Origin: Pocillopora damicornis
Lineage: Eukaryota
NCBI RefSeq assembly: GCF_003704095.1
Contig: NW_020845694.1
Span: 434,001-498,000 of the forward strand
DNA length: 64,000 nt
Direction of reading: 5' to 3'
Below are positions 16,165 to 45,417 of this stretch, piece after piece. Each line of letters begins with the position of its first letter. Within the stretch, counting starts at the first letter, position 1. Under the pieces are notes generated by a model. The model searched no databases, was not told where the DNA came from, and worked only from the letters and a program-made list of their open reading frames with translations. Both the position numbers and the translations under genes were made by a program.

Positions 16165-17091
16165 ATGAACGAAACACTAACTTGCTCCTTTTTGGACATC
16201 GATTTGGATCAGACGATAGACACGCACGCGGCCAACTTCGCTACATGTGTCCTAAATTCTATTTTTTCCTTGATTACAATCACGGGAAATTTCATTATTC
16301 TAAATGCAATTTGGAAAAACCGAGAACTGCATTCGCCATCGTTCGTCCTTTTGTTTTTTCTCGCTTTATCGGATCTTCTCGTTGGACTCATTTGCCAGCC
16401 ATCTTTCGTCGCGTTTAAGATCGCTGAACTTAGAAGAGACTTCAGCTGCTACTGCATCTCGAGAATGATTCAGAGTATATCTGGATGGACAACCACTGGT
16501 GCGTCTCTGCTAACTCTAAGTGCAGTTTCATTGGATCGATTATTGTCTTTGACTCTTCATTTACGATACAACACAATCGTAACAGTTCCTCGTGCGTTTG
16601 GTGCTTGCGTCTTTCTCTGGTTCTTTGTCGTCACAGTTATGATGTTGAGGTTCACTATGACCAACTGGATAATTCTCCCTTTGATCATATTACTGACAAC
16701 ATTTCTCGTCACAGCGCTGAGCACCTTAAAAATATTCATGATTGTGCGCAGACATCTTTGCCAGATCAAGCAACTTCAACGAAATCTAAACACTTCTCAA
16801 ACGGAAACAGTCCAAGTACTTAAGTGTCGAAAATCTGTAGTGACTGTGCTTTACGTTTACGGTCTGTTTTGGATTTTTTATGTTCCTTTTTGTGTAACAA
16901 TGCTTATGGATTCAGCCGAGGGATACACGCTGACAGTAAAAATCGTATATGACTACGTGGGGACTATAGTTTTTCTCAATTCGTTTTTTAATCCAATTGT
17001 GTACTGTTGGCGCATCAGGGAGATACGAAATGCCGTAAAGAGCTTACTTCGAAAACGCGTCCTCTTAGAAAATAACACTCGAGGCAAGTGA
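16165..17091 (+). CDS. Single-exon orphan class A GPCR (melanocortin/adenosine receptor-like), 308 aa
   Basis: Seven hydrophobic segments; GN (TM1), LALSD (TM2), SLDRL (TM3), FYVP (TM6), NPIVY (TM7), helix 8. Confidence 0.95.
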   Translation: MNETLTCSFLDIDLDQTIDTHAANFATCVLNSIFSLITITGNFIILNAIWKNRELHSPSFVLLFFLALSDLLVGLICQPSFVAFKIAELRRDFSCYCISRMIQSISGWTTTGASLLTLSAVSLDRLLSLTLHLRYNTIVTVPRAFGACVFLWFFVVTVMMLRFTMTNWIILPLIILLTTFLVTALSTLKIFMIVRRHLCQIKQLQRNLNTSQTETVQVLKCRKSVVTVLYVYGLFWIFYVPFCVTMLMDSAEGYTLTVKIVYDYVGTIVFLNSFFNPIVYCWRIREIRNAVKSLLRKRVLLENNTRGK

Positions 17092-19685: not shown

Positions 19686-20621
19686 ATGTTTACAGCCAAC
19701 TTAACATGTTTTTTCTTTGAAGTTAAATGGGAGCTAGATGAAGAAGAAAAAACAGCAAGTGTGGTGTTGTGTATTTTATGCGCGCTGTTTGCAATAACTG
19801 CCATATCAGGAAATGGCATCGTATTGTTCATTATATGGAAAACACAAGAGCTTCATTCACCATCTTTCATTTTGTTGTTTTGCTTGGCCATGTCTGATCT
19901 TCTTGTGGGATTGGTTGGACAGCCATCCTTCGTTGCTTACAAGATAGCGGAGAGCCTCGAATCTTTCAGCGCGTATTGTAACCTGCGACTGATTCAGTTC
20001 TTTTGTGGGTGGATAAGTTCTAGCGTGTCCTTTATAACTGTTAGTGGCATCTCTGTCGACAGACTTCTTGCTTTACATCTTCACTTGCGATACAAAAGCA
20101 TCATTACAGTCCGACGTGTGATAACCGCAATAATAATCGTTTGGCTGGTTTGCTCGTTGGCAACCACACTAAAGCTTTGGGTGCAAAACTGGATCATTAT
20201 TGCGATTATTGGTAAATTATCGGCCATAACAACAACTGCCTTTTGCACAGGTAAAATTTTTCGTATCGCTCGAGGGCACGAACGTCAAATCACTGGACAA
20301 AATAATATAGTAACTGGTTGCTCAATCCGAACTAAGGATATTAACATACGTGCATGTAAAAAGTCTGCCACGACAGTAATTTATGTCTTTAGCTGGATGT
20401 TGATGTTTTATCTTCCTTTCCTCGTCGTTATGGCTATGGAAATGATCAAAGGCGATGAAAAGGTAGTTAAAATCGCTTACGAGTGGGCCTCACTGCTTGT
20501 TTTTATAAACTCTTCAGTAAATCCCGTTATCTACTGTTGGAGAATGGAACAGATTCGACTTCGCATTAAGACCTTATTTAAAAGAAAAGCTTCATCCAAT
20601 AAAATCCATTCCGTCAGTTGA
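19686..20621 (+). CDS. Single-exon orphan class A GPCR, 311 aa
   Basis: 7TM; GNGIV, LAMSD, SVDRL, FYLP, NPVIY; good Kozak context GCCATG. Confidence 0.95.
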   Translation: MFTANLTCFFFEVKWELDEEEKTASVVLCILCALFAITAISGNGIVLFIIWKTQELHSPSFILLFCLAMSDLLVGLVGQPSFVAYKIAESLESFSAYCNLRLIQFFCGWISSSVSFITVSGISVDRLLALHLHLRYKSIITVRRVITAIIIVWLVCSLATTLKLWVQNWIIIAIIGKLSAITTTAFCTGKIFRIARGHERQITGQNNIVTGCSIRTKDINIRACKKSATTVIYVFSWMLMFYLPFLVVMAMEMIKGDEKVVKIAYEWASLLVFINSSVNPVIYCWRMEQIRLRIKTLFKRKASSNKIHSVS

Positions 20622-21315: not shown

Positions 21316-21827
21316 CGCGTATATTTGATTCCCGAGTCAAAAACGAAAAAGACTGATAATTAATGGGTAAGGAGTAGTTAATTGAAAAACGAGATGGCAG
21401 AGTTAAAGCAGAGTCGAAAGGCTGTAAATTATTTTCTTTCTGGGCAGCGTAACGCAGGAAATGTAAAGTTAACCGAAAAATTGTTTGCTTTCCACGGTAT
21501 TGGCTGACATTCAGTCGTTCTCATTTCATACACGAAAATACATTGAAAAAAGCTCAGTTGTTCTCTTTTTGATGAAGCGCTAGGTCTGTCCAATTTAAAC
21601 TGCCAGAACTGTTTCCGTGCCGAAGAAAAGTTGACATTTTCAAGAAGTATTTGTTCCTTAGTGATGTTTTTACCATTTACAAAAACAAATGTTTTGATCG
21701 TCACTTTCTGAGTTGTATAACTACTAATTGCAAGACGTGTGTATAAATTATGTATTTCTATCAGTATATAGCTTCATATTTTTCTTGTGAAGTCCCAGCT
21801 TGTATCAGTGTCACGTTCGCCCTCGTC

Positions 21828-22751
21828 ATGAACAAAACGTATTCAAATTGTTTCTTTTTGGATATTAACTTGGAAAAAAGCAAAGAAACCATAACTGCAA
21901 GCATCCTCACTTGTATTTTTAACGCGGTGTTTTCATTAATCACATCTACAGGGAATTTTATCATTCTTCGTGTCATCTGGAAAACTCAGGAGCTTCATTC
22001 GCCGTCCTTTATGCTTTTGCTTTGTCTTTCTGCCTCCGATCTCCTGGTCGGACTGATTTGTCAGCCGTTTTATGTGGCTTATCAGATCTCAGAGCTTTCA
22101 GATAACTACGGGGCTTACTGCATCCTGAGAATGACTCAAAATATATCTAGCTGGACAACGGCTGGTGTATCTTTGCTGATTTTGAGCTGTGTCTCCGTTG
22201 ATCGACTTCTTGCTTTGACTCTTCATCTAAGATACAGGACAATTGTGACTGTTCACCGTGTGCTTTTTGTCGCGTGTTTTCTCTGGACAGGTTGTATAAC
22301 TGCGGTTTTGTTAAAGGTTTGGATAAGAAATTGGATCATCATTCCTTTAGTGGTGTTATTGATTTCATTCCTGGTTACAGCTGCAAGCACGTTCCAGATA
22401 GTACAAATTGTTCGCAAGCACCAGCGACAGATAAAACAGCAGCAACGAAACATCCAAATGAACACAGTGAATGCACTCAAATGTAGAAGATCTGCCGTGA
22501 CTGCACTCTATATATATGGCTTGTTCCTGTTTTTCTATGTCCCATTTTGCTCGACCTTGTTCGCAGAGGCACTATTTGGGTACACCTTAAAGGTGAAGAT
22601 TGCCTATGACTACACTACAACTGCTGTATTTGTTAACTCCAGTTTGAATCCATTTCTTTACTGCTGGAGAATTAAGGAGATACGCCATGCTGTTAAAACT
22701 GCTCTCAAGGGAAACTCGGGAAAATATCAGGGGGAATTGCCGTCAAAGTAA
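21828..22751 (+). CDS. Single-exon orphan class A GPCR (307 aa from MNKTYS; an upstream in-frame ATG at 21750 gives 333 aa)
   Basis: 7TM; GNFII, LSASD, SVDRL, FYVP, NPFLY; the 21828 start aligns with paralog N-termini. Confidence 0.93.
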   Translation: MNKTYSNCFFLDINLEKSKETITASILTCIFNAVFSLITSTGNFIILRVIWKTQELHSPSFMLLLCLSASDLLVGLICQPFYVAYQISELSDNYGAYCILRMTQNISSWTTAGVSLLILSCVSVDRLLALTLHLRYRTIVTVHRVLFVACFLWTGCITAVLLKVWIRNWIIIPLVVLLISFLVTAASTFQIVQIVRKHQRQIKQQQRNIQMNTVNALKCRRSAVTALYIYGLFLFFYVPFCSTLFAEALFGYTLKVKIAYDYTTTAVFVNSSLNPFLYCWRIKEIRHAVKTALKGNSGKYQGELPSK

Positions 22752-31992: not shown

Positions 31993-32967
31993 ATGACTGC
32001 GACCAACTTTACGTGCTTTTTCTTTTATACTGGATGGGAACAGGGCGAAAAAGAAACATTTGCAAGTGTTGTCTTATGCGTTTTGTGCGCTCTGCTCGCA
32101 TTGACTGCGATCTCGGGAAATGGTATTGTCATCTTTGTAATATGGAGCACACGGGAGCTACATTCGCCATCTTTGGTTTTGCTGCTGCTTTTGGCCGCGT
32201 CAGATTTTCTTGTCGGATTGGTTGGCCAGCCATTCTTCGTTGCTTTCAAGATTGCGGAGAGCCTCAGATATTTCAGCGCGTATTGTAACTTGCGACTGAT
32301 TCAGTTTTTTTCTGGGTGGATAACTTCTGGTGTGTCTTTTATTACACTTAGTGCCATCTCTGTCGACAGACTCCTCGCTTTAATCCTCCATTTGCGTTAC
32401 AAAAACATCATCACAGTACGACGTGTGATAATAGCAGTGATCGTTGTTTGGCTGGTTTGCTCCATTCTGACCATATTGAAATTTTGGGTGCAAAACTGGA
32501 TCATTATCGCAGTTTGTACTAATTTATCGGCTGCTGTAGTAATTGCGTTTTGTACTGGTAAAATTTTTCGAATTGCGCGAAGACACGAGCGGCGCATTAA
32601 GGAACAGAACGTTGCATTAACACTTAACCCGTCCTTGGCGGGGGACTTTAACGTACGTAAATGTAAAAAGTCTGCCATGACAGTAATTTATATTTTCGGC
32701 TTGATGTTGATGTTATATATTCCTTTCCTTGCCGTTATGGCTGTGGAAATTATCAAAGGAAAAACAAATTTAGTTAAAGTCGCTTACGAGTGGGCTTCGT
32801 TGATCGTTTTCATAAACTCGTCCGTCAATCCCGTTATCTACTGCTGGAGAATGAAACAAATACGAAACGGCATTAAAAGGTTTTTCGGGAGATTAATTTG
32901 CCCAAGAATTGCATCATCTTGCTGTATTCAGCTTGTTGGTTTGGCGGCCGGTTCTGAAAGATCTTAA
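31993..32967 (+). CDS. Single-exon orphan class A GPCR, 324 aa
   Basis: 7TM; GNGIV, LAASD, SVDRL, LYIP, NPVIY; closest to the 19686 receptor. Confidence 0.95.
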   Translation: MTATNFTCFFFYTGWEQGEKETFASVVLCVLCALLALTAISGNGIVIFVIWSTRELHSPSLVLLLLLAASDFLVGLVGQPFFVAFKIAESLRYFSAYCNLRLIQFFSGWITSGVSFITLSAISVDRLLALILHLRYKNIITVRRVIIAVIVVWLVCSILTILKFWVQNWIIIAVCTNLSAAVVIAFCTGKIFRIARRHERRIKEQNVALTLNPSLAGDFNVRKCKKSAMTVIYIFGLMLMLYIPFLAVMAVEIIKGKTNLVKVAYEWASLIVFINSSVNPVIYCWRMKQIRNGIKRFFGRLICPRIASSCCIQLVGLAAGSERS

Positions 32968-33952: not shown

Positions 33953-34721
33953 AGATCTTTATATATTTGGAAATTTTGTTCTTTGATAAACTTAAAAGAA
34001 GCAAGCGGTCTTTGAATTTATTTAATGTTGACATTGCAAAGTTTCAAGTTTTTATCAGGCAGAAAAAAGGGAATAACTACCAAAGACCAACACTCTCAGA
34101 CATGTGCCCTTATTTGCCCATATACTAATAACAAAAAAATATATTTATCCGTTTTCATATTGCCTTATCTTCTTCATCTTGCGAAAGCCCCAGAATCTTT
34201 TTGATGTTTAGGAAAGGCTTAATAGGACCTCTGGCAATGAATCAGATATTCAAACAGTCGATTGGAACTGATTAAATTGGACGAAATTTACGAAAAAACA
34301 TGTCGCTCAAATTTTTATGTGGCATCGACGAAAGCCCGTCTGTGAATATTAATATCTATTGTATTTGCAGGTGCATAGTGTACTGAGGCGCCTAATGTGA
34401 CTTGCATAAGTAGAGTTACTTTTTAATTTGTAACATTTCTTTAAGTGGCCAGAAATTTTGATTACCCAAGCATGTAATTTGACTCACAAAAGGCCACTTC
34501 AAAAACCTTTCACACTTCGTGCAAAGTGGTACTGAATGGTCAACAAGTCTATATCGGCTGTGAGTAAAACCAACTTGACATGTTTTTCTTTGAATTTAAA
34601 GGCAATTTTGACGGACTAGAAATAACTGGATGTTTCGTTTTATATATGTGATTTGTACGCTCTGGTTACATTGACTGCAATATTAGGAAAAGGCATTGTT
34701 GTGTTAATTATATGGAGCTTC

Positions 34722-34982
34722 ACACGGTGCCCTCTTTCTCTCCAACCGACATCTCGCTGTAATTCTAAAATTTTCATTGAATATATTGTAACTCGTGAAC
34801 GTGCGGTTGGGAATCTCTCTGCGATAGAGGGCCAGACTGCTGACACCTTGAATTCACAAACGGGACTTTGAGCGCGCTGTCGACGAGTTCGCTTGATATT
34901 CACGAAAAGTATCTGATGAGTCTCTAGGCCGAGTCGAAACGCCGCGTCATACCAATCACTAAGTATTTTTTCACAAATTCTC
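34722..34982 (+). mobile_element. Retrozyme-like ~260-nt non-coding element
   Basis: Non-GPCR sequence replacing TM2-TM3; self-complementary (GCCCTCT 34729 / AGAGGGC 34826; CCAACCG 34742 / CGGTTGG 34804) and contains a hammerhead core. Confidence 0.65.
34909..34952 (+). ncRNA. Type I hammerhead ribozyme
   Basis: GTAT-CTGATGA-GTCTC TAGGCC GAGTC-GAA-ACGC C GCGT-C-ATAC: complete conserved core, stems I/II/III, GUC cleavage triplet ending at C34948; one U-U mismatch in stem II. Confidence 0.8.
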
Positions 34983-35364
34983 TTCAGACAATACAAAAAC
35001 GTCATTACAGTTCGACGTGTGGTTACTACATTGATAGCAATTTGGCTGGTTGCTCAATCGCAACTTTATTTAAGTTTTGGGTGCGAAACTGAATCATTAT
35101 CGGTGTTTTTTGTTCATTAATCGGCAACTAAAACACCTGCGTTTTGCTCAGATAAAGTTTTTCATATCGCTTGCACGCACGAGCGTCAAATCAACAGACA
35201 GAATCATGGAATAAAAAGTAAGTTAGAAAGGAGGGCAGTAGAGTAGATAAAGGTAAAAGCTGATATCATTTTGACTTCAGTTTGGATTCCCAGATTCATT
35301 GCAAAGTTTTGAGGTGCACTTGTACTAATTACTAAATGTACTTAAGTTAATGAGTCAATCGTTA

Positions 35365-35722
35365 AACTCATACGAACGAATAACAAAATCGGACGGCCGC
35401 GTAGCGGGTGTCCAATTTAATAAATACGACTATAATAACAGACAGAATTGGACGACAAGAAGTCCTTTTATCAATTAATCCGGCTCAACTATGACAAAAT
35501 TTGATAAATCAAACAGGTGATACGTTTTCATGAAACTGAGCAACAGATAACTCGGCAAAATGCACAACAACAGCGCAGGTACTGTCCACTGACATAGGCA
35601 TGACGTGTCAACTATCCTATGACACTGTCCAATTACAAGCATGACTCGTACATTGTCCTCTTGGTGCTCAAATCGAACTGGTGATAACCGAGCACGTTCG
35701 AGAATTTTGTGATTGTTTTGAT
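35365..35722. repeat. Interspersed repeat adjoining the LINE fragment
   Basis: AATAACAAAATCGGACGGCCGCGTAGCGG...CAGAATTGGACGACA...GTGATAACC motif series typical of coral repeats (recognition only). Confidence 0.45.
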
Positions 35723-35737
35723 TTGTTATGGAACTGT

Positions 35738-35985
35738 TTGCAGCATCTGAAGAAAACCGCCACTGGACCGGACCTCATACCGTTCTGGGTGTGGAGAGAC
35801 CACGCGGAAATTTTTACACGTTTAATGTGCGGGATCTGGAACTTGTCCCTGACGTTCAGTACTTGGCCCTCATCGTAGAAAAGAGCTCACGTAACCCCCA
35901 TTCACAAGGTTGACGTTCCCAAGGGAAAGACAGACTACAGAGGAATCAACATCACCCATGTAATTGCACGCGCATTTGAGCAACT
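35738..35985 (+). mobile_element. Non-LTR retrotransposon (LINE, CR1/L2-like) reverse transcriptase fragment
   Basis: [26 protein letters not shown]...IWNLSL...[39 protein letters not shown] matches RT domain 0-2 motifs (GPD.IP, P..WK.A.V.P..K, YR.I) with an in-frame stop. Confidence 0.85.
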
Positions 35986-37446: not shown

Positions 37447-38406
37447 TTATATGGCTCGGCGTACTTGCGTATTTCTCCAGCAGTAAATAAAAGGATTTAC
37501 CGACGAGTTTATGAATACAATCGTTGTTGCATAATCATAAGCGATTTTTATCGACCACGTATAGCCTTGAATCGCTTCTACTGCACTGACTGCAATAAAT
37601 GGCAGATAAAACATCAGCATAATACCATAAAGATAAATTACGGTAGTGGCTGATTTTTTACAATTAAAAGCATCAACTGGGTTGTTTTGTGACCTGTTTC
37701 GTACGTTTCTCAAGTGAGCTATTTTTTTAATGTGGCTATTTATTTGGCTTTGATGTCTTCGTGCAATTTGATATATCTTCCACGTGCAAAATGTGGATGA
37801 AAAAATATTCACAACAACAAGAGAAACCGGAATGATGACCCAGTTTCGAACCCAAAACTTCAAAATGGTGACAATACAGCAAAAAACCCACACTGCTATC
37901 ATGGCTATCGTAATGCGGCACACTGTGATCGTGCTTTTGTATCGCAAGTGAAGCGTTAAGGCGAGGAGTCGGTCGACAGAAGCTGCACCGAGGATGATAA
38001 AGGACACACTCGAAGTTATCCATCCACAAAAGAACTCAATCATTCGCAAGTTACAATACGCGTTGAATTTTTTGAGACTCTCCGCTACCTTGTAGGCAAC
38101 GAATGAGGGCTGGCCAACAAATCCCACAAGAAAATCAGACGTTGCTAAGAAAAATAACAGAGCGAACGATGGCGAATGAAGTTCTCGTTTCTTCCAGATT
38201 ACGAGCATGACGATTCCATTTCCAAATACTGCAGACAGTGCAAAGACGCTGCTAAATAGACATGATATGACACTCACTGTGACATCGTGTACTGTCTTTG
38301 TCCAATATACTTCCATGAAGAAACATGTTAACTTATCGGTGGAATTCATGGTTGACGAATATGTGATGCCACTGATCTCAAATGGATCATACTGCTCCCA
38401 CGACAA
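37447..38406 (-). CDS. Single-exon orphan class A GPCR, 319 aa (alternative start 38349); C-terminus cut by a probable premature TAA
   Basis: 7TM; GNGIV, LATSD, SVDRL, FYLP, NPFIY; the frame continues past TAA as SYLRKLSF... to a stop at 37378-37380. Confidence 0.92.
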   Translation of the reverse strand: MSWEQYDPFEISGITYSSTMNSTDKLTCFFMEVYWTKTVHDVTVSVISCLFSSVFALSAVFGNGIVMLVIWKKRELHSPSFALLFFLATSDFLVGFVGQPSFVAYKVAESLKKFNAYCNLRMIEFFCGWITSSVSFIILGAASVDRLLALTLHLRYKSTITVCRITIAMIAVWVFCCIVTILKFWVRNWVIIPVSLVVVNIFSSTFCTWKIYQIARRHQSQINSHIKKIAHLRNVRNRSQNNPVDAFNCKKSATTVIYLYGIMLMFYLPFIAVSAVEAIQGYTWSIKIAYDYATTIVFINSSVNPFIYCWRNTQVRRAI

Positions 38407-38663: not shown

Positions 38664-41600
38664 ATGAGGTTTGTGTGGATATTTCGCGTATTTTTCATTT
38701 CCGTTTTTTTAAATGGGACCTGTGGTGATCGTGGTAATTTGAAGAAATTTTGGAAACCTTGTTTTGTCGGAGATCAAATAGAAAACACGTGCACCGATCC
38801 AAGTAACTCTTGTCACGGGAAATCAGACAAACAGTTCAAGCTTGTCCGCTTGGAGGGAGTGAAGGTAACTAAATAAATAGTTATTAATACGTATATGTAC
38901 CTAGAAAAGGAAACTGGCTTTTTTTCGGTGGAACTTTACATAAGTTCCGTAGGTCACCGGCTTGCTTTTTTTTTCGCTTTCTAATACCAGTTTCCAATTT
39001 GTTGGCACAGGTTGTTTTTTTTTGTTATTCTTAGCTGGTTGCTGGTTGCAAGTGCAGGTAAACAGAAATCAATCGAGAAAAGAGCTTTGTTCGTAAAAAA
39101 GTGAACCTGTTAACTCTGGTCTTCCCTCTCCGCTAAATTCGAGATTGTTTTTTTCCATGTGGCTTGTCACTGTCAAGTAATCGCGTTTTTCTACTTTGCT
39201 TACGCAATTGAAATCTCTCAGTATTTGATTTCCTCGATAAATTCCAATTCCCCTGTAGGTAGTTATCTTGAAATATAAAAGAGAATGAAATCACATCCAA
39301 ATGTTCATCAAGCGTCCTCGATTTATTTGTACTAGAAAACTTTGATCTCAGTAAAATGCACGTTCAGTTTTGACCAAATACGTAGGTGGGGCAAATCCAT
39401 GCAACAGCTTCATTTGAAGTTACGCGAATGCATTCAAAATCCACGCAGTGTATTCATAAAAATCGCCACCCGACATTGTCTACCAACTTAAATCTGTTTC
39501 AACTGTTTGTTTTAATTCATAACAATCCGAAGGTTGTTCCTCTCTTATGGACCGATTAAACTTGCCTCGCCATGCGAATCCCTCTACATCTCCATTGATT
39601 ATTCAGCCTTTGTATTCCGGTGTCAAGTTCACGATTCTTAAACCATTTTATTCAATTATTTGCTTTTGATTTAAGATAAAAAAGGCTACACAATCCATTT
39701 CAAAGGGTATAACTCTTTACTTTTAATTTACATCGTCTACGTACAGACAGGTCACGTGCAGTGGTTGGAAGTCGACGATGGGAGGAAGCCCGTAAAACTC
39801 ATCACTCGAGCAATGACACCATTAGTTCTTGGTATGTAACTCTTTCTCTTGAAGTTGTATTTGTGTGATCTTTTCTTTAAGAATTGTTTCGAATTAGATC
39901 AGTTTTAAGTAAGACACTGATAAAAGTAAGTGTTGACAACCAAAAGGAGAAAAAAATTTTGCGCCTGATATGGGACTTGAACCCATGACCCTCAGATTAA
40001 AAGTCTGATGCTCTACCGACTGAGCTAACCGGGCTCACAGAAATTTTCAACTGTGGAAATGAAAATTCCGTAAACTAGCAGCAGAGTAAGAGTTGGATTT
40101 GACTTTATTCTACATGCACTGCGCATAGTGGTCGCATCAGTTATCAACAGGGTATAGTTACGTTGCAATTGCACGGTGAATTTAGCTGAAAGTACGGTCA
40201 AATGCAACTCCTCTATAGACTTTCGCTCTCTGGTAACAAGGGCTCCCATATAATTTGATTAAACTTCATAACTGTTCGCATTGCATAATCATTCACCGGT
40301 TTATAGTTGCCATGCTGTTGTGGTATTCATAAAGTAGATGCGAAGGAAAATTAAAAGAAGCACACAAAAAAAGACTAAAACTATGAATCTGTCATTGTGA
40401 GGCTGTTGTTGTAGTCGCAAATGCCAACACCATGACATTATTTGGCTGCGAGGATCGACTCGACCGCAGTAGAATTCGGACAGCAGCTCAACAATTATGC
40501 ATTTTCCAGATGATCCACATTTCCAGCCTCTTGGATTGGACAATTAGAGAGAAATGGACTCTCGTTAACCCTTAGAGACAGTTCGCTGAGCTTTGATGGC
40601 CATTTATATTGCCACACTGCTCGCCTTATCAAACGTAGCTGCGACATGGATTAGGGTATATGTGTTAGGAAACCGAAAAATTCGATAGACTGGCGAATGA
40701 ATCAAAGTTAATAAATTCGTCCAGGGTGCTGGATGACGAATACATCAAACAAAATAACGTTTGCTGCACTGATTTCTCTTTCCTTCGTGGAAGGAGAAAA
40801 TAACCGCATGCTCACGGAGAATAGGTTCCCAAATGCTTTGGATACTCGATATTTTTTCGAAAGTTTTCTAATGCTCCCAGTTGTGATTTCGCTGTACGTA
40901 GAGATTCCCGACTTCTTGTCAGAGGAAGAGTGTGATCACATCATAACACTGGCAAAGGAAAGTGGACTCCAGACAAGTACTTCAGGATATTTCACCTACG
41001 ACGGAGACTTGGACGAGGAACTAGCCCTAGCTGGTGAGCTGGATCTAGAATTACGGAAAATGACCAAAACAATTTTCAGAGTTTAGATCAATTAATTTTT
41101 TTGAGCATTTTAATGAAGCAAAAAAATTTGGAAACGTGGTAAGCCGCAACAGGTGTGCGCAAGTCAGCTCATGACCCTGCTACACGTGAACAATGCAAAG
41201 AAATTAAATTGAGCCTTTTTTTGTCGGGATCAGATTCTTTTTTTCTCTTGAGTACTTTAACTGTATTCCAGCTCAACCATGATTATTAAAGAAGTCTAAA
41301 ATCCATTATGATATTGAGATATATTATGATATTGACCACACTCCACAATAAGCCAGCAGAAAACATCTCTCTGACCTATTTCTTTTAAGACAGTGACTGG
41401 ACTCTCGCGCCTGAGCAAGCATTTGCTGGAAACTACAGTCTTTGGGATGCAAATGGTGATGGTTCCATTGATGCACAAGAGGTACTGCATTTGGGAAGTC
41501 ACTTGCGTAATGTAATAAAATTAAAGTGCTCGGAGGTCTTATGATCGTTTACCAAAAAATCAAATTGCTTTTATTGTTGAAGGTGAAGGCATTTGCTGGA

Positions 41601-44600
41601 AAACACAAACAACTCTATCTGGATGATGAAGAAGTGCAAGAAATGTAAGAACATTTGACTGTAGTTGTTTTCCCTTTGTTAAAAAATAGAGCGTCCCGAG
41701 AATTTCGGCTCATTTTTGCAATGTAAGGAATAACCATAAAGGAGCATTTAAAGAGGAAATTTATGATTTAAGGATGAAGAAGAATAATACAGATTACAAA
41801 CGACGAACTTGAAGACGCTAGGCTTAATTTTATGACGACATGAACCCATGACCGCATTACTTTCTCAGGATTAGTAGAGTATTCAACTTATAAGTATTAC
41901 TCTAGTTTCAACAAGCAGTTGTCTATAACAGGTTTACACGGTTCTCAGGAGGTTACCTTGAAACGTGAAGGTAGGAAATGAATGAAGCCAGCTGATGAGA
42001 AAATGCAAGAGAAATCTCCTACAGAAACGTATAGGATTGTGCATTATAAAGTTTATCGTACCTTTGACGCTTCTTGACATTTGGAGAGTAAGGATGTTGC
42101 AATGGTGACAGCGCATGCTCTCTCGTGCTGCCGCCTGATTTCGATTCTCGTAGCCGGGGCATGTTTCCCAAAAGTACCGGCAACTTTATGGGCCGTTTCT
42201 TAATCAACGACTTTTTATCTTTTAGGGTTAAACACCTTCAAATCAATGATGAGCTCAGAGATGGTAGGTAAAATAAATAAAGATACGTGTAGACTTTCCA
42301 CAGAGACATGATCGGAACAATATAACCCTTGTCAACATAAATTTCTTATCACTCAAAATGTGAAAAGCTACCTCAGGGAAACTATCTGAACCATTTACAA
42401 AAAAAGAACTGAATGAATGTTTGTTAAATTTCAGGGAGAATAAAAGAGCAATTTTTCAACAAGTTGAATATCAACAAGATAATGCGGTACATGAATTTTT
42501 TGAAAGACAAAAGCCCACGCCATAGGTTTCGTTTTAGCCAGCAGGCCTGGTTACGGCAGGACAAAACCGCTGACCCTGTTCTGAGACGTCTTCATGAAAG
42601 GTATTTTGAAATTTGAGTCAATGACAAAATATTGCCAGGATGTGCGATTGAAATCAAGAGAGATTCTATAAGATTAAGTTTTGTAAGGTTTGGCGCATTA
42701 AATATCTATGTATTTTGTGTTAGGGTTATAAGGCTAACCAAACTTCCGAGAAGGATAGTCCAAGGGGGAGAACCAATGCAGGTAAATAACGATTTTGTGC
42801 CGATCCAGTTACTGTTTGCAGGATATTAGATATGCTAATCACATTTAGAAGGAAATTAAACTCCATAAATTTCATATCACTTGTAAAATGAAGTTAAAAA
42901 ATAATTCCTAGAATGATATAAAGCTTTCCCACGCCGGGAATCGAACCCGGGCCGCGGCGGTGAGAGCGCCGAATCCTAACCACTAGACCACGTGGGAACT
43001 TACTTAATCGCTAATAAATCGCTCCTGAAATTTCTAACAGTCTTAAAATAACGAATTTTTAATGATAATATACCAAACGGGTTGTTTGATTTCTTACTTG
43101 TTGAGACGAGTGTGCACGACAGCAGTGATTGAAAAGCCATTGAGTTTCCTACCTGGTAAAATGTAACCACTGCTACACGTGGAACCATTTCGAAGTCTTG
43201 TGAATTTTGAGAAAGTTTGCTATTTTTTACTTTTTAGGTTCTTCGTTATGAGAAGTTTGGTCATTATCACGGCCACCTGGATTCTACCATAAAAGACCCC
43301 ACAGTCCCTTGCTGTCATCAAAACCATCTCAGAGCACCCGACTGCAGAGTCTGTAGGTAAGATTTTCACCCTAGGAGGTTACTCGGGAAATGCATCTGAA
43401 AGAATGGCGAAGAATAAATGAAACAAAGAAAAAACTATAGTACTTACGAGCTGCGTACGAATGGACAAGAAAGCGAGTGAGCGAACGTTGGGTGAGAAAC
43501 AGAACGAACGAGTGATTGAGTGAGTGAGACTGAAAAGAGTTGTCAACCAGTCAGTCAGTGAATCAAAGTGTCAGTGTTTCAGCGAGTCAATGAGTCAGTG
43601 ACTCAGTGAGTTGGTGCGCGCACGCGTTATATGAGTGCGTGGATACGTGTATCAGTGATTGGATGCGTACGAATTATTGTGTCAGTGAATGAGTGACTGG
43701 GTTCGCACGAAACCTTTGGATTGAAGAGGAGTGAGTGATCTTAATGAGTGAATGAGTGAGCGAGTGAGTTTAATTTATGAGTGAATGATCGAGTGTGTAT
43801 TCGGGTGAGGGAGTGAGGATTATCATGGTTAAGTTTTGCTTATGGTGGGTCACGAGGTTTTTTAACTACCATGTGATATGACCAAATTTTCTCTTTCAGG
43901 TTTATCACTATTTTGTATTATCTTAACAATGTAGAAGAAGGAGGAGAAACAGCTTTCTTGATAGCTGATAACACTACAACCACTCCAGATGTAAGTAACT
44001 CAACTTTCCGCATACTCAAATTCGCAGCTTATACACTATGGGTAGCTTATTCAACAAGGATATCAACAACTGATCCTGATCATAGACAACGCAATTCTTC
44101 AAGGAAAAAAAAGGAAATGAAAAGAGAAAAAACCGTAGTTTCCAATTTGACAATCTTTTTCTTAATGAACAAAGCAACCTAATGGTCTTTCATAGAACAC
44201 AAATACAGAGGCAGGTAAGGGATACTGATTCATTTTTTCCTCCTAGATCTCTTTCCTAAATATTAAATATTAAGTCTGAATTTTACTAAACAAAGAGATA
44301 TATCATATTATTTAATCTTGAAGATCATAACATGCTAATGAATTATTTTTTTGCGTAGAAGTACTGATCTTAGAGTGCTAAAGCTCTCGATGCATACTTG
44401 ACCTTGCTCACTAGAGCGCCGTATATGTAGGCGACCTCTTCGTATGATATTTCTTAGTTTACCCTTGGCTTAAAATATCAGTAACAGCATGTCCCTGAAG
44501 ACTTTCTGCAGTAAACTGCGGCATCGTCTTGAAAAATTTTTACCCAAAAAATATGCATAAGAAAGTGAGTCGTGTTTGCACTAAAACGCAAGCACAGCAT

Positions 44601-45345: not shown

Positions 45346-45417
45346 TTCCCACGCCGGGAATCGAACCCAGGCCGCGGCGGTGAAAGCGCCGAATCCTAAC
45401 TACTAGACCACGTGGGA
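45346..45417 (-). tRNA. trnE-UUC: tRNA-Glu (TTC), possibly impaired
   Basis: 72-nt cloverleaf between convergent paralogs B and C; D-loop GG is changed to AG (TAGTAGTT) and the T stem has a U-G pair. Confidence 0.85.

What the first reader, a model, noticed from the sequence alone, without database searches (positions are those of the whole stretch)
34722..34982. Hammerhead-ribozyme element (retrozyme-like) inserted into a GPCR gene
Seen: a full type I hammerhead core at 34909-34952 (CUGAUGA, stem II with a 6-nt loop, GAAA, near-palindromic stem III ACGC-C-GCGU, GUC cleavage site, stem I GUAU/AUAC). It lies in a ~260-nt self-complementary insert that replaces TM2-TM3 of a receptor, on the sense strand. 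Known: metazoan non-LTR retrozymes are short non-coding type I HHR elements that yield circular RNAs, and very short stem III loops favour dimeric cleavage. Inference: a retrozyme monomer landed in the receptor gene and would cut any transcript from its promoter. It either caused or followed gene death.
Basis: partly seen in the sequence, partly recalled or inferred. Interest (0 to 1): 0.8.

Follow-up and report, generated by a model that had tools for sequence, protein, structure and literature searches.

The report
Decayed hammerhead retroelement in dead receptor gene
The hammerhead ribozyme motif is real, but it belongs to one old, worn copy of a small mobile element of a kind already described in corals, which landed in a receptor gene that is broken in several other places, so the finding is ordinary.

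Summary
The type I hammerhead (HHR) at 34909-34952 is real. The catalytic core is complete and the cut site follows C34948. The helices are weak: stem I has 4 bp, stem II carries a U.U mismatch, and stem III has 3 bp. Rfam Hammerhead_1 scores it 17.6 bits, below the gathering score of 34.

It lies in a 209-nt copy (34767-34975) of a 211-225-nt non-coding repeat. This genome holds at least 49 matches, about 16% diverged and decaying neutrally. The majority sequence carries a perfect HHR. A metagenome holds a young sister family (93.6% alike) with exactly that HHR.

Across the family, copies are 5'-truncated, partly tandem, or preceded by an inverted truncated copy. One 8-13-bp target duplication encloses each composite. 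No coding sequence lies beside them. This is the Penelope-like (PLE) insertion signature, and PLEs exist in this genome. The coral's canonical retrozyme HHR is a different family.

The insert does not replace TM2-TM3. It is a clean insertion with a 6-bp duplication (AATTCT) in the second intracellular loop of an intronless GPCR pseudogene, sense strand. TM2-TM3 was lost by a separate deletion of about 190-200 nt. I found no evidence of cleavage, circles or special self-pairing.

The scan flagged similar HHR elements elsewhere in this genome. Known kind, low interest.

The parts
34767..34975 (+). One-unit (209-nt) decayed copy of a 211-225-nt non-coding, non-autonomous hammerhead retroelement
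   Evidence: Homologous at 70-86% to at least 49 places in the same genome and at 80-87% to metagenome copies. Its limits are set by the flanking duplication and by alignment of the flanks to paralogous receptors. It differs from the family majority sequence by 7.7% (biased low because the copies were found with this one).
34761..34766 (.). Target-site duplication, left copy (AATTCT)
   Evidence: The paralogues have a single AATCCT/ACATCT here. With the element and one copy removed, the pseudogene aligns straight through.
34976..34981 (.). Target-site duplication, right copy (AATTCT)
34909..34952 (+). Minimal type I hammerhead. Stem I 34909-12/34949-52. Core CUGAUGA 34913-19. Stem II 34920-24/34931-35, with a U.U mismatch at 34921/34934. 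Loop 34925-30. GAAA 34936-39. Stem III 34939-41/34945-47. Cut expected after C34948.
   Evidence: Sequence. Rfam RF00163 17.6 bits, full-length alignment. Other copies have A at the 34934 position, which makes the stem perfect. Energy of the HHR fold is -1.0 kcal/mol.
34569..34727 (+). GPCR pseudogene, N-terminus and TM1, with in-frame stops at 34617-19 and 34623-25
   Evidence: tblastn and blastn to the window's intact 7tm_1 genes at 19686-20621 and 31993-32967.
34727..34728 (.). Junction of a deletion of about 190-200 nt that removed TM2-TM3 (paralogue nt ~163 to ~358-364)
   Evidence: Global alignment with the element taken out.
34728..34766 (+). Receptor remnant (end of TM3 and start of the second intracellular loop), directly upstream of the insertion
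   Evidence: Aligns to paralogue g31993 nt 360-395, p = 0.002 against 500 shuffles. Unique in the genome. Not similar to the element's spacer.
34982..35207 (+). GPCR pseudogene, second intracellular loop to TM5, with a 1-nt deletion near 35049. Homology stops near 35207 and the 3' half of the gene is missing.
   Evidence: Downstream sequence is other repeats.

Best explanation
Window 34767-34975 is a single, old, neutrally decaying copy of a short (211-225 nt) non-coding retroelement. Its only recognisable functional module is a minimal type I hammerhead ribozyme, about 30 nt from the 3' end of this copy. The host is a stony coral.

Most likely life cycle (inferred): a master locus with head-to-tail units is transcribed. 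The reverse transcriptase and GIY-YIG endonuclease of an autonomous Penelope-like element (PLE) copy that RNA into staggered breaks in the DNA. Copying starts a few tens of nt downstream of the hammerhead cut site. This yields 5'-truncated copies, partial tandems and an inverted truncated copy upstream, all enclosed by one target duplication. On the RNA, the hammerhead probably acts as a dimer through its near-palindromic stem III, processing multimers to unit length.

The window copy is the simplest outcome. It is one unit with a 6-bp duplication, inserted in sense orientation into the second-intracellular-loop codons of an intronless rhodopsin-type receptor gene, which is now a pseudogene. 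Loss of TM2-TM3 is a separate deletion. The copy keeps the whole catalytic core, but its weakened helices make cleavage as a monomer unlikely. Nothing indicates a present function.
For: Shown:
- HHR core and helices.
- Repeat family with at least 49 matches on many contigs, with unrelated host genes beside the copies (GPCR, tubulin, RING) and no RT or endonuclease ORF.
- The unit runs head to tail in the tandems of this genome, cut to cut 225 nt in L011 and 211 nt in L007.
- The majority sequence has a perfect HHR, and that HHR is found exactly in 43 metagenome contigs. Whole units there are 80-87% like the window copy and 93.6% like each other.
- Neutral decay in this genome: 16% mean divergence; HHR columns 86% identical against 84% for the rest; core motif kept in 6 of 23 copies; 14 copies within 3 mismatches of the 35-nt HHR and none perfect.
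- Penelope-type architecture: an inverted 5'-truncated copy head to head with the main copy (L002, L005, L006, L018, L028, and many metagenome loci), partial tandems (L007, L011, L020, L075, L091), and one duplication of 8-13 bp around the whole composite. These are the features listed for PLEs in PMC8557442.
- 3' ends lie 13-57 nt past the cut site, as with internal initiation by a PLE reverse transcriptase (PMC11167929).
- PLEs exist in this genome: RVT_1, GIY-YIG and an HHR on one strand of contig C1396.
- Clean insertion with a duplication, and a separate deletion.
- The locus with its insert is present unchanged in an independent DNA run.
Against: - No autonomous PLE carrying this family's HHR or 3' region was found. 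The one PLE locus examined has no similarity to the element.
- The window copy's duplication is only 6 bp, a length that also arises by chance (flank controls gave 2-6). Its reality rests on the paralogue alignment.
- Rfam's gathering score is not reached by any copy (17.6-25.3 bits).
- There is no covariation within the family, because the stems are invariant or randomly mutated.
- No RNA evidence for cleavage, dimers or circles. The libraries were mostly poly(A)-selected or available only as contigs, so this is weak evidence.
- The two classes of 3' end (the 'tail') are suggestive, not demonstrated.
Confidence: 0.8

Rival explanations
1. It is a true non-LTR retrozyme in the sense of Cervera and de la Pena (2020). 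The unit is cut out by its hammerhead and ligated to a circle of about 211-225 nt. The circle is the template that is reverse-transcribed (rolling circle) and integrated. The window copy would be one turn of that circle.
For: Unit size, non-coding nature, type I HHR and head-to-tail continuity all fit (PMC7229834). Several copies are almost exactly one unit long but start at different points of the unit: window about 31 to 29, L003 54 to 51, L021 46 to 46. A 2026 preprint argues that retrozymes derive from PLEs, so this reading overlaps with the best one (10.64898/2026.07.22.740005).
Against: The HHR is the minimal type, not the canonical loop-loop type of invertebrate retrozymes. The canonical coral retrozyme HHR is a separate family here. 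No arrays longer than about 3 units were seen. No back-joint reads. No excess self-pairing. Genomic copies span the cut site uninterrupted, which uncleaved RNA explains equally well.
Confidence: 0.2
2. It is a SINE of the schistosome Sm-alpha type: a polymerase III transcript with internal A and B boxes that carries a hammerhead and is moved by a LINE.
For: It is short, dispersed and non-coding with an HHR. A stretch near the 5' part (GGTTGGGAATCC) loosely resembles a B box (from the sequence only).
Against: ARAGORN finds no tRNA-like head. There is no A box at the proper spacing and no poly(A) or simple-repeat tail. Inverted and tandem composites inside one duplication are not a LINE/SINE feature.
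Confidence: 0.04
3. The hammerhead has been taken over by the host. It regulates or processes transcripts of the receptor locus.
For: It is in sense orientation inside a transcription unit. Near-identical low-depth contigs of the locus occur in one oligo-dT RNA library.
Against: The receptor is a pseudogene with at least five independent lesions. The HHR of this copy is weakened. The family decays neutrally, with no extra conservation of the HHR. No read ends pile up at the cut site, and the depth of 3-8 could be DNA carry-over.
Confidence: 0.02
4. The hammerhead motif is a chance match.
For: The Rfam score is below the gathering threshold. A loose pattern gives 5 hits in the window against 1.4 expected.
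Against: The family majority sequence carries a perfect HHR, and identical HHRs occur in dozens of related copies elsewhere. The genome-wide pattern gives 152 hits against 5 for the control.
Confidence: 0.01

Closest known systems
Minimal type I hammerheads of Penelope-like elements (Cervera and de la Pena 2014; Lunse, Weinberg and Breaker 2016; reviewed in PMC6765202) and non-autonomous PLE derivatives
   Same: A type I HHR with short stem I and a very short, near-palindromic stem III. Insertions are 5'-truncated, partly tandem, or have an inverted truncated copy upstream, all inside one target duplication (PMC8557442). 3' ends lie downstream of the cut site, as with internal initiation of reverse transcription (PMC11167929). 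PLEs co-occur in the genome.
   Different: There is no RT/GIY-YIG ORF. The whole unit is only 211-225 nt. No autonomous partner sharing its sequence has been identified.
Metazoan non-LTR retrozymes (PMC7229834), e.g. the 225/245-nt Acropora millepora retrozyme
   Same: A coral host, a non-coding unit of about 220 nt, a type I HHR, head-to-tail continuity, and target duplications longer than 4 bp.
   Different: The coral retrozyme HHR has a GGCC stem II and an ACAG/CUGU stem III. It is a different family in this genome, and here it also sits next to a PLE ORF. In our family I saw no long arrays, no circular RNA evidence, no significant self-pairing, and a minimal rather than canonical HHR.
Amphibian satellite 2 / axolotl retrozyme hammerheads and the mussel retrozyme HHR
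   Same: Short stem III. The axolotl ribozymes cleave poorly as monomers and much better as dimers (PMC7229834). The mussel HHR has a similar stem II start and ACGCGCGU in stem III (PMC7229834 supplement).
   Different: Those elements form large tandem arrays of 330-390 nt and are abundantly expressed. Apart from the HHR, no sequence homology to them was compared here.
Schistosome Sm-alpha / Sj-alpha SINE-like elements with hammerheads
   Same: A short, dispersed, non-coding element with a type I HHR.
   Different: No polymerase III head was detected. The insertion architecture is Penelope-like, not LINE-like.

Membership tests
Hammerhead ribozyme, type I (Rfam RF00163) | Conserved core CUGANGA ... 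GAAA ... and a cleavable UH site | tested here: met
   CUGAUGA at 34913-19, GAAA at 34936-39, GUC at 34946-48.
Hammerhead ribozyme, type I (Rfam RF00163) | Three helices around the core, with stem I open | tested here: met
   Stem I has 4 bp. Stem II has 4 bp plus a U.U mismatch. Stem III has 3 bp and a 3-nt loop. All are weak: the HHR fold is -1.0 kcal/mol against an alternative MFE of -5.4.
Hammerhead ribozyme, type I (Rfam RF00163) | Score at or above Rfam's gathering threshold (34 bits) | tested here: not met
   Window copy 17.6 bits. Best copies in this genome 25.3 and 22.6 bits. The canonical coral retrozyme HHR also stays under its family's threshold, so the threshold is strict for these short forms.
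Hammerhead ribozyme, type I (Rfam RF00163) | Self-cleavage | not testable with these tools
   No pile of read starts or ends at 34948/34949, but coverage was minimal.
Metazoan non-LTR retrozyme | Type I HHR inside a non-coding repeat of 170-400 nt | tested here: met
   Unit 211-225 nt. Long open frames were sought only in the flanks of the copies, and none encodes RT or endonuclease; the unit itself was not tested for coding.
Metazoan non-LTR retrozyme | Organised as tandem repeats (dimers to large multimers) | tested here: inconclusive
   Only partial tandems of 1.3-3 units were found. Most copies are dispersed single units.
Metazoan non-LTR retrozyme | Canonical HHR with normal helix sizes, as in invertebrate retrozymes | tested here: not met
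   The HHR is minimal. The canonical coral retrozyme HHR is a different family in this genome.
Metazoan non-LTR retrozyme | Expressed as unit-length circular RNA | tested here: inconclusive
   No back-joints in four runs. The libraries were poly(A)/oligo-dT or contigs only.
Metazoan non-LTR retrozyme | Stable, highly self-paired predicted structure | tested here: not met
   z-scores +0.13, +0.17, +1.0 and -1.06. No consensus structure.
Penelope-like element system (non-autonomous member) | Type I HHR with a very short, palindromic stem III | tested here: met
   Stem III is ACGCCGCGU. Two copies could pair over 8 bp with one C.C mismatch (feature as described in PMC6765202).
Penelope-like element system (non-autonomous member) | 5' truncation, partial tandems and an inverted 5'-truncated copy upstream, enclosed by one target duplication | tested here: met
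   Family level: L002 (11 bp), L003 (13 bp), L007 (12 bp), and metagenome loci L065 (13), L088 (11), L084 (11), L086 (10). The window copy itself is a plain single unit with a 6-bp duplication.
Penelope-like element system (non-autonomous member) | Optional 30-40-bp 'tail' from two reverse-transcription start sites | tested here: inconclusive
   3' ends scatter between +13 and +57 nt past the cut site, and about 10 of 26 copies carry the longer end. HSP ends are too imprecise to settle this.
Penelope-like element system (non-autonomous member) | An autonomous partner (RT plus GIY-YIG) in the genome that shares the element's terminal sequence | tested here: inconclusive
   PLE ORFs are present in the genome. 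The one examined shares no sequence with this element.
SINE with hammerhead (Sm-alpha type) | tRNA-like or A/B-box polymerase III head and a LINE-type tail | tested here: not met
   No tRNA-like structure. No poly(A) at the copy ends.

The most novel reading that the evidence does not exclude
The family could be a missing link between retrozymes and Penelope-like elements in an invertebrate: a unit of about 211-225 nt whose circular or multimeric RNA is copied by a PLE reverse transcriptase. On this reading, near-unit-length, permuted copies such as the window's (209 nt against a 211-nt unit) are direct footprints of one turn around a circle. That would give a small, tractable system, with a young family available in another coral, for testing how PLE enzymes use hammerhead RNAs.
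Probability: 0.15. Interest if true: 0.45.

Novelty: new member of a known kind. Interest (0 to 1): 0.17.

Why it matters
This locus matters little. It is one dead copy of a known class of mobile element in a dead member of a large receptor family.

At family level the data are a useful example. In a coral, a minimal-hammerhead element of about 220 nt shows the full Penelope-type insertion signature without any coding capacity. In the same genome, the HHR shared with the 'canonical' coral retrozyme sits beside a PLE ORF. [quoted passage not shown] The young sister family found in a metagenome would be the place to test activity.

Tried and rejected
- Rfam at gathering thresholds finds only tRNAs in the window.
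- The whole-genome search with RF00163 returned a single sub-threshold hit, because only 73 of 31,546 candidates were scored. It is not informative.
- Self-complementarity: four folds and RNAalifold gave nothing above shuffles. My own shuffle script timed out.
- I first took 34728-34767 for filler or a Penelope 'tail'. It is not similar to the element's spacer and is unique in the genome. It turned out to be receptor sequence.
- Copies on contig C1708 that share only the first ~86 nt of the element lie in long local duplications without long open frames in L047; the frames of 155-318 aa in L046 were not examined. No link to a PLE was found there.
- Flanking ORFs of the family copies are host genes, not RT or endonuclease.
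- The ORF at 35681-35878, which I suspected of being a LINE RT fragment, has no Pfam support.
- Other hammerhead families of this genome are absent from the window.
- Reads: no support for transcription of this copy beyond low-depth contigs in one RNA library. No joints, no end piles, and no reads at 95% or better in the raw-read run.
- Covariation within the family cannot be assessed, because the stems are the same in all good copies. Helices differ only between the genome's separate HHR families.

Full report
**1. The motif.** The sequence at 34909-34952 reads as a type I hammerhead.
- Stem I is GUAU/AUAC.
- The core is CUGAUGA.
- Stem II is GUCUC/GAGUC with a 6-nt loop and a U.U mismatch at 34921/34934.
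- GAAA follows. Stem III is A-U, C-G, G-C closed by three bases.
- The GUC site places the cut after C34948.

Rfam's Hammerhead_1 model aligns it end to end. The score is 17.6 bits against a gathering score of 34 (E 0.23 on 501 nt), and nothing appears at gathering thresholds. By nearest-neighbour energies the hammerhead fold of this copy is marginal. It is worth -1.0 kcal/mol, against -5.4 for a competing fold of the same 52 nt.

**2. It belongs to a repeat family.** A 301-nt query around the motif finds at least 49 matches on many contigs of the same 234-Mb, 4393-contig genome, at 70-86% identity. They cover window 34768-34978.

In tandems within this genome, the sequence after the cut site runs on into the start of the next unit. 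The cut-to-cut unit is 225 nt in L011 and 211 nt in L007.

The majority sequence of 23 aligned copies carries a perfect hammerhead. Its stem II is GUCUC/GAGAC, so the window's U.U is a single A-to-U change.

The copies decay neutrally:
- Mean distance to the majority sequence is 16% (13.5% outside CpG).
- Hammerhead columns are 86% identical, against 84% for the rest.
- Only 6 of 23 copies keep even a loose core motif.
- Only 14 copies genome-wide lie within three mismatches of the 35-nt hammerhead, and none is perfect.

The window copy is among the best kept, but that is partly because the family was fished with it.

**3. The same family is young elsewhere.** An exact 28-nt hammerhead string of the majority sequence occurs in 43 metagenome contigs, mostly from one sample series.
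- Whole units there are 80-87% identical to the window copy and 93.6% (88-98%) identical to each other.
- Most carry the complete hammerhead with GUAU/AUAC. Selection by the search pattern inflates that share.
- One hit (L062) is an unrelated GC-rich contig whose hammerhead has a long stem III.

**4. Which kind of hammerhead element.** A generic pattern finds 152 hammerheads in the genome against 5 for the reversed control. They fall into at least five families.
- The commonest family has a GGCC stem II and an ACAG/CUGU stem III. It is nearly identical (two positions in loop II) to the hammerhead of the cloned Acropora millepora retrozyme (PMC7229834 supplement).
- Our family is different. With stem I of 4 bp and stem III ACGCCGCGU, it is of the minimal type. 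PMC7229834 assigns that type in A. millepora to Penelope-like or Terminon elements. PMC6765202 describes such hammerheads as having a very short palindromic stem III and acting as dimers.
- RNA runs labelled coral metagenome hold the locus, so the host is a stony coral.
- From memory only, the assembly size and contig number fit Pocillopora damicornis. I did not test this.

**5. How it moves.** Copies lie in unrelated flanks next to host genes (a GPCR, tubulin, a RING protein). No RT or endonuclease frames lie beside them, in this genome or in the metagenome.

The insertions have the architecture listed for Penelope-like elements in PMC8557442.
- Many copies are 5'-truncated.
- Some are partial tandems: L007, L011, L020, L075, L091.
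- Many have an inverted 5'-truncated copy head to head with the main copy: L002, L005, L006, L018, L028, L058, L063, L065, L086, L088, L089, L097.
- A single direct repeat encloses the whole composite. It is 11, 13 and 12 bp in L002, L003 and L007, and 8-13 bp in six metagenome loci. Shifted-flank controls gave 2-6 bp.
- 3' ends lie 13-57 nt beyond the cut site. This recalls the internal start of reverse transcription and the optional 'tail' shown for a PLE enzyme in PMC11167929.

That paper also found that cleavage is not needed for insertion. This fits genomic copies that span the cut site uninterrupted.

PLEs exist in this genome. On contig C1396, an RVT_1 frame, a GIY-YIG frame and a hammerhead follow each other on one strand. 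That PLE shares no sequence with our element, so the partner of this family remains unknown.

**6. The receptor context.** The window holds five intact intronless 7tm_1 genes. The region 34569-35207 is a sixth copy in the same orientation as the hammerhead.

Closer alignment shows two separate events.
- The 40 nt just upstream of the element (34728-34767) match the paralogues' end of TM3 and start of the second intracellular loop (p = 0.002 against shuffles).
- When 34767-34981 is reduced to one copy of AATTCT, the pseudogene aligns straight through the site to both paralogues.
- So the element (34767-34975, 209 nt) is a clean insertion with a 6-bp target duplication.
- TM2-TM3 was lost by an independent deletion of about 190-200 nt, joined at 34727|34728.

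The gene also has two in-frame stops (34617-19 and 34623-25) and a 1-nt deletion near 35049. It has no homology beyond about 35207, where other repeats begin. The order of these lesions cannot be told from this genome alone.

**7. Structure and expression.** The element is not more self-paired than shuffled sequence. It is -1.06 for a young metagenome unit. RNAalifold finds no shared structure.

Reads and contigs of four runs were laid on 34200-35700 at 80% likeness.
- An independent DNA-like run has contigs identical to the locus, including the insert.
- One oligo-dT RNA library has near-identical contigs at depth 3-8 over the pseudogene and the element. This could be DNA carry-over.
- Other family copies occur inside longer transcripts.
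- There are no back-joints, no piles of read ends at the cut site, and no reads of 95% or better in the one raw-read run.

These libraries are poorly suited to small non-polyadenylated RNAs, so this is absence of evidence only.

**8. Verdict.**
- The motif is real and the element is real.
- The class is known: a minimal-hammerhead, Penelope-type non-autonomous retroelement, overlapping the retrozyme concept.
- The copy is an old, probably inert insertion in a multiply broken receptor pseudogene.
- First-stage notes of this scan describe similar hammerhead and Penelope-type insertions elsewhere in this genome. They agree with what I measured here but were not used as evidence.

Noticed in passing
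G000 contig C1396:20311-21014 (locus L055 3305-5165, minus strand): A degraded Penelope-like element. An RVT_1 frame, a GIY-YIG frame and, about 350 nt downstream on the same strand, a hammerhead nearly identical (two positions in loop II) to that of the canonical Acropora millepora retrozyme. This ties the 'canonical' coral retrozyme ribozyme to a PLE in this genome.
   Followed up: partly
whole genome G000: At least five hammerhead families: 152 exact pattern hits against 5 in the control. One family (stem II GUGAA/UUCAC) often occurs as inverted pairs about 45-100 nt apart, i.e. fold-back insertions.
   Followed up: partly
window 35368-35723: A repeat of about 355 nt with hundreds of genomic candidates. 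Its depth in RNA libraries is very high (thousands). Reads carry A-rich loose ends after 35480, which looks like an expressed SINE-like element. It lies just past the point where receptor homology ends.
   Followed up: partly
window 35727-35980: Another repeat with a 92% identical copy on contig C4007. The open frame 35681-35878 looked RT-like by eye but has no Pfam support.
   Followed up: partly
window 4531-4602, 39962-40034, 42926-42997, 45346-45417: Four tRNA genes (Rfam 58-70 bits). Three are near-identical copies of one tRNA, scattered among the receptor genes.
   Followed up: no
window 16165-17091, 19686-20621, 21750-22751, 31993-32967 (+) and 37447-38406 (-): A cluster of five intact intronless rhodopsin-family receptor genes. 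Another copy of the hammerhead element (locus L003) also lies beside a 7tm_1 gene on a different contig.
   Followed up: partly
locus L062 5009-5060 (metagenome contig Ga0272441_10001622): A GC-rich, probably microbial contig. Its type I hammerhead shares the same core and stem II string as the coral family but has a long GC-rich stem III. It was picked up only because of the shared 28-mer.
   Followed up: no
G000 contig C1708 (loci L046-L048): Local duplications of 1-1.6 kb, direct and inverted, that contain only the first ~86 nt of the element (window 34768-34853) without its hammerhead.
   Followed up: partly
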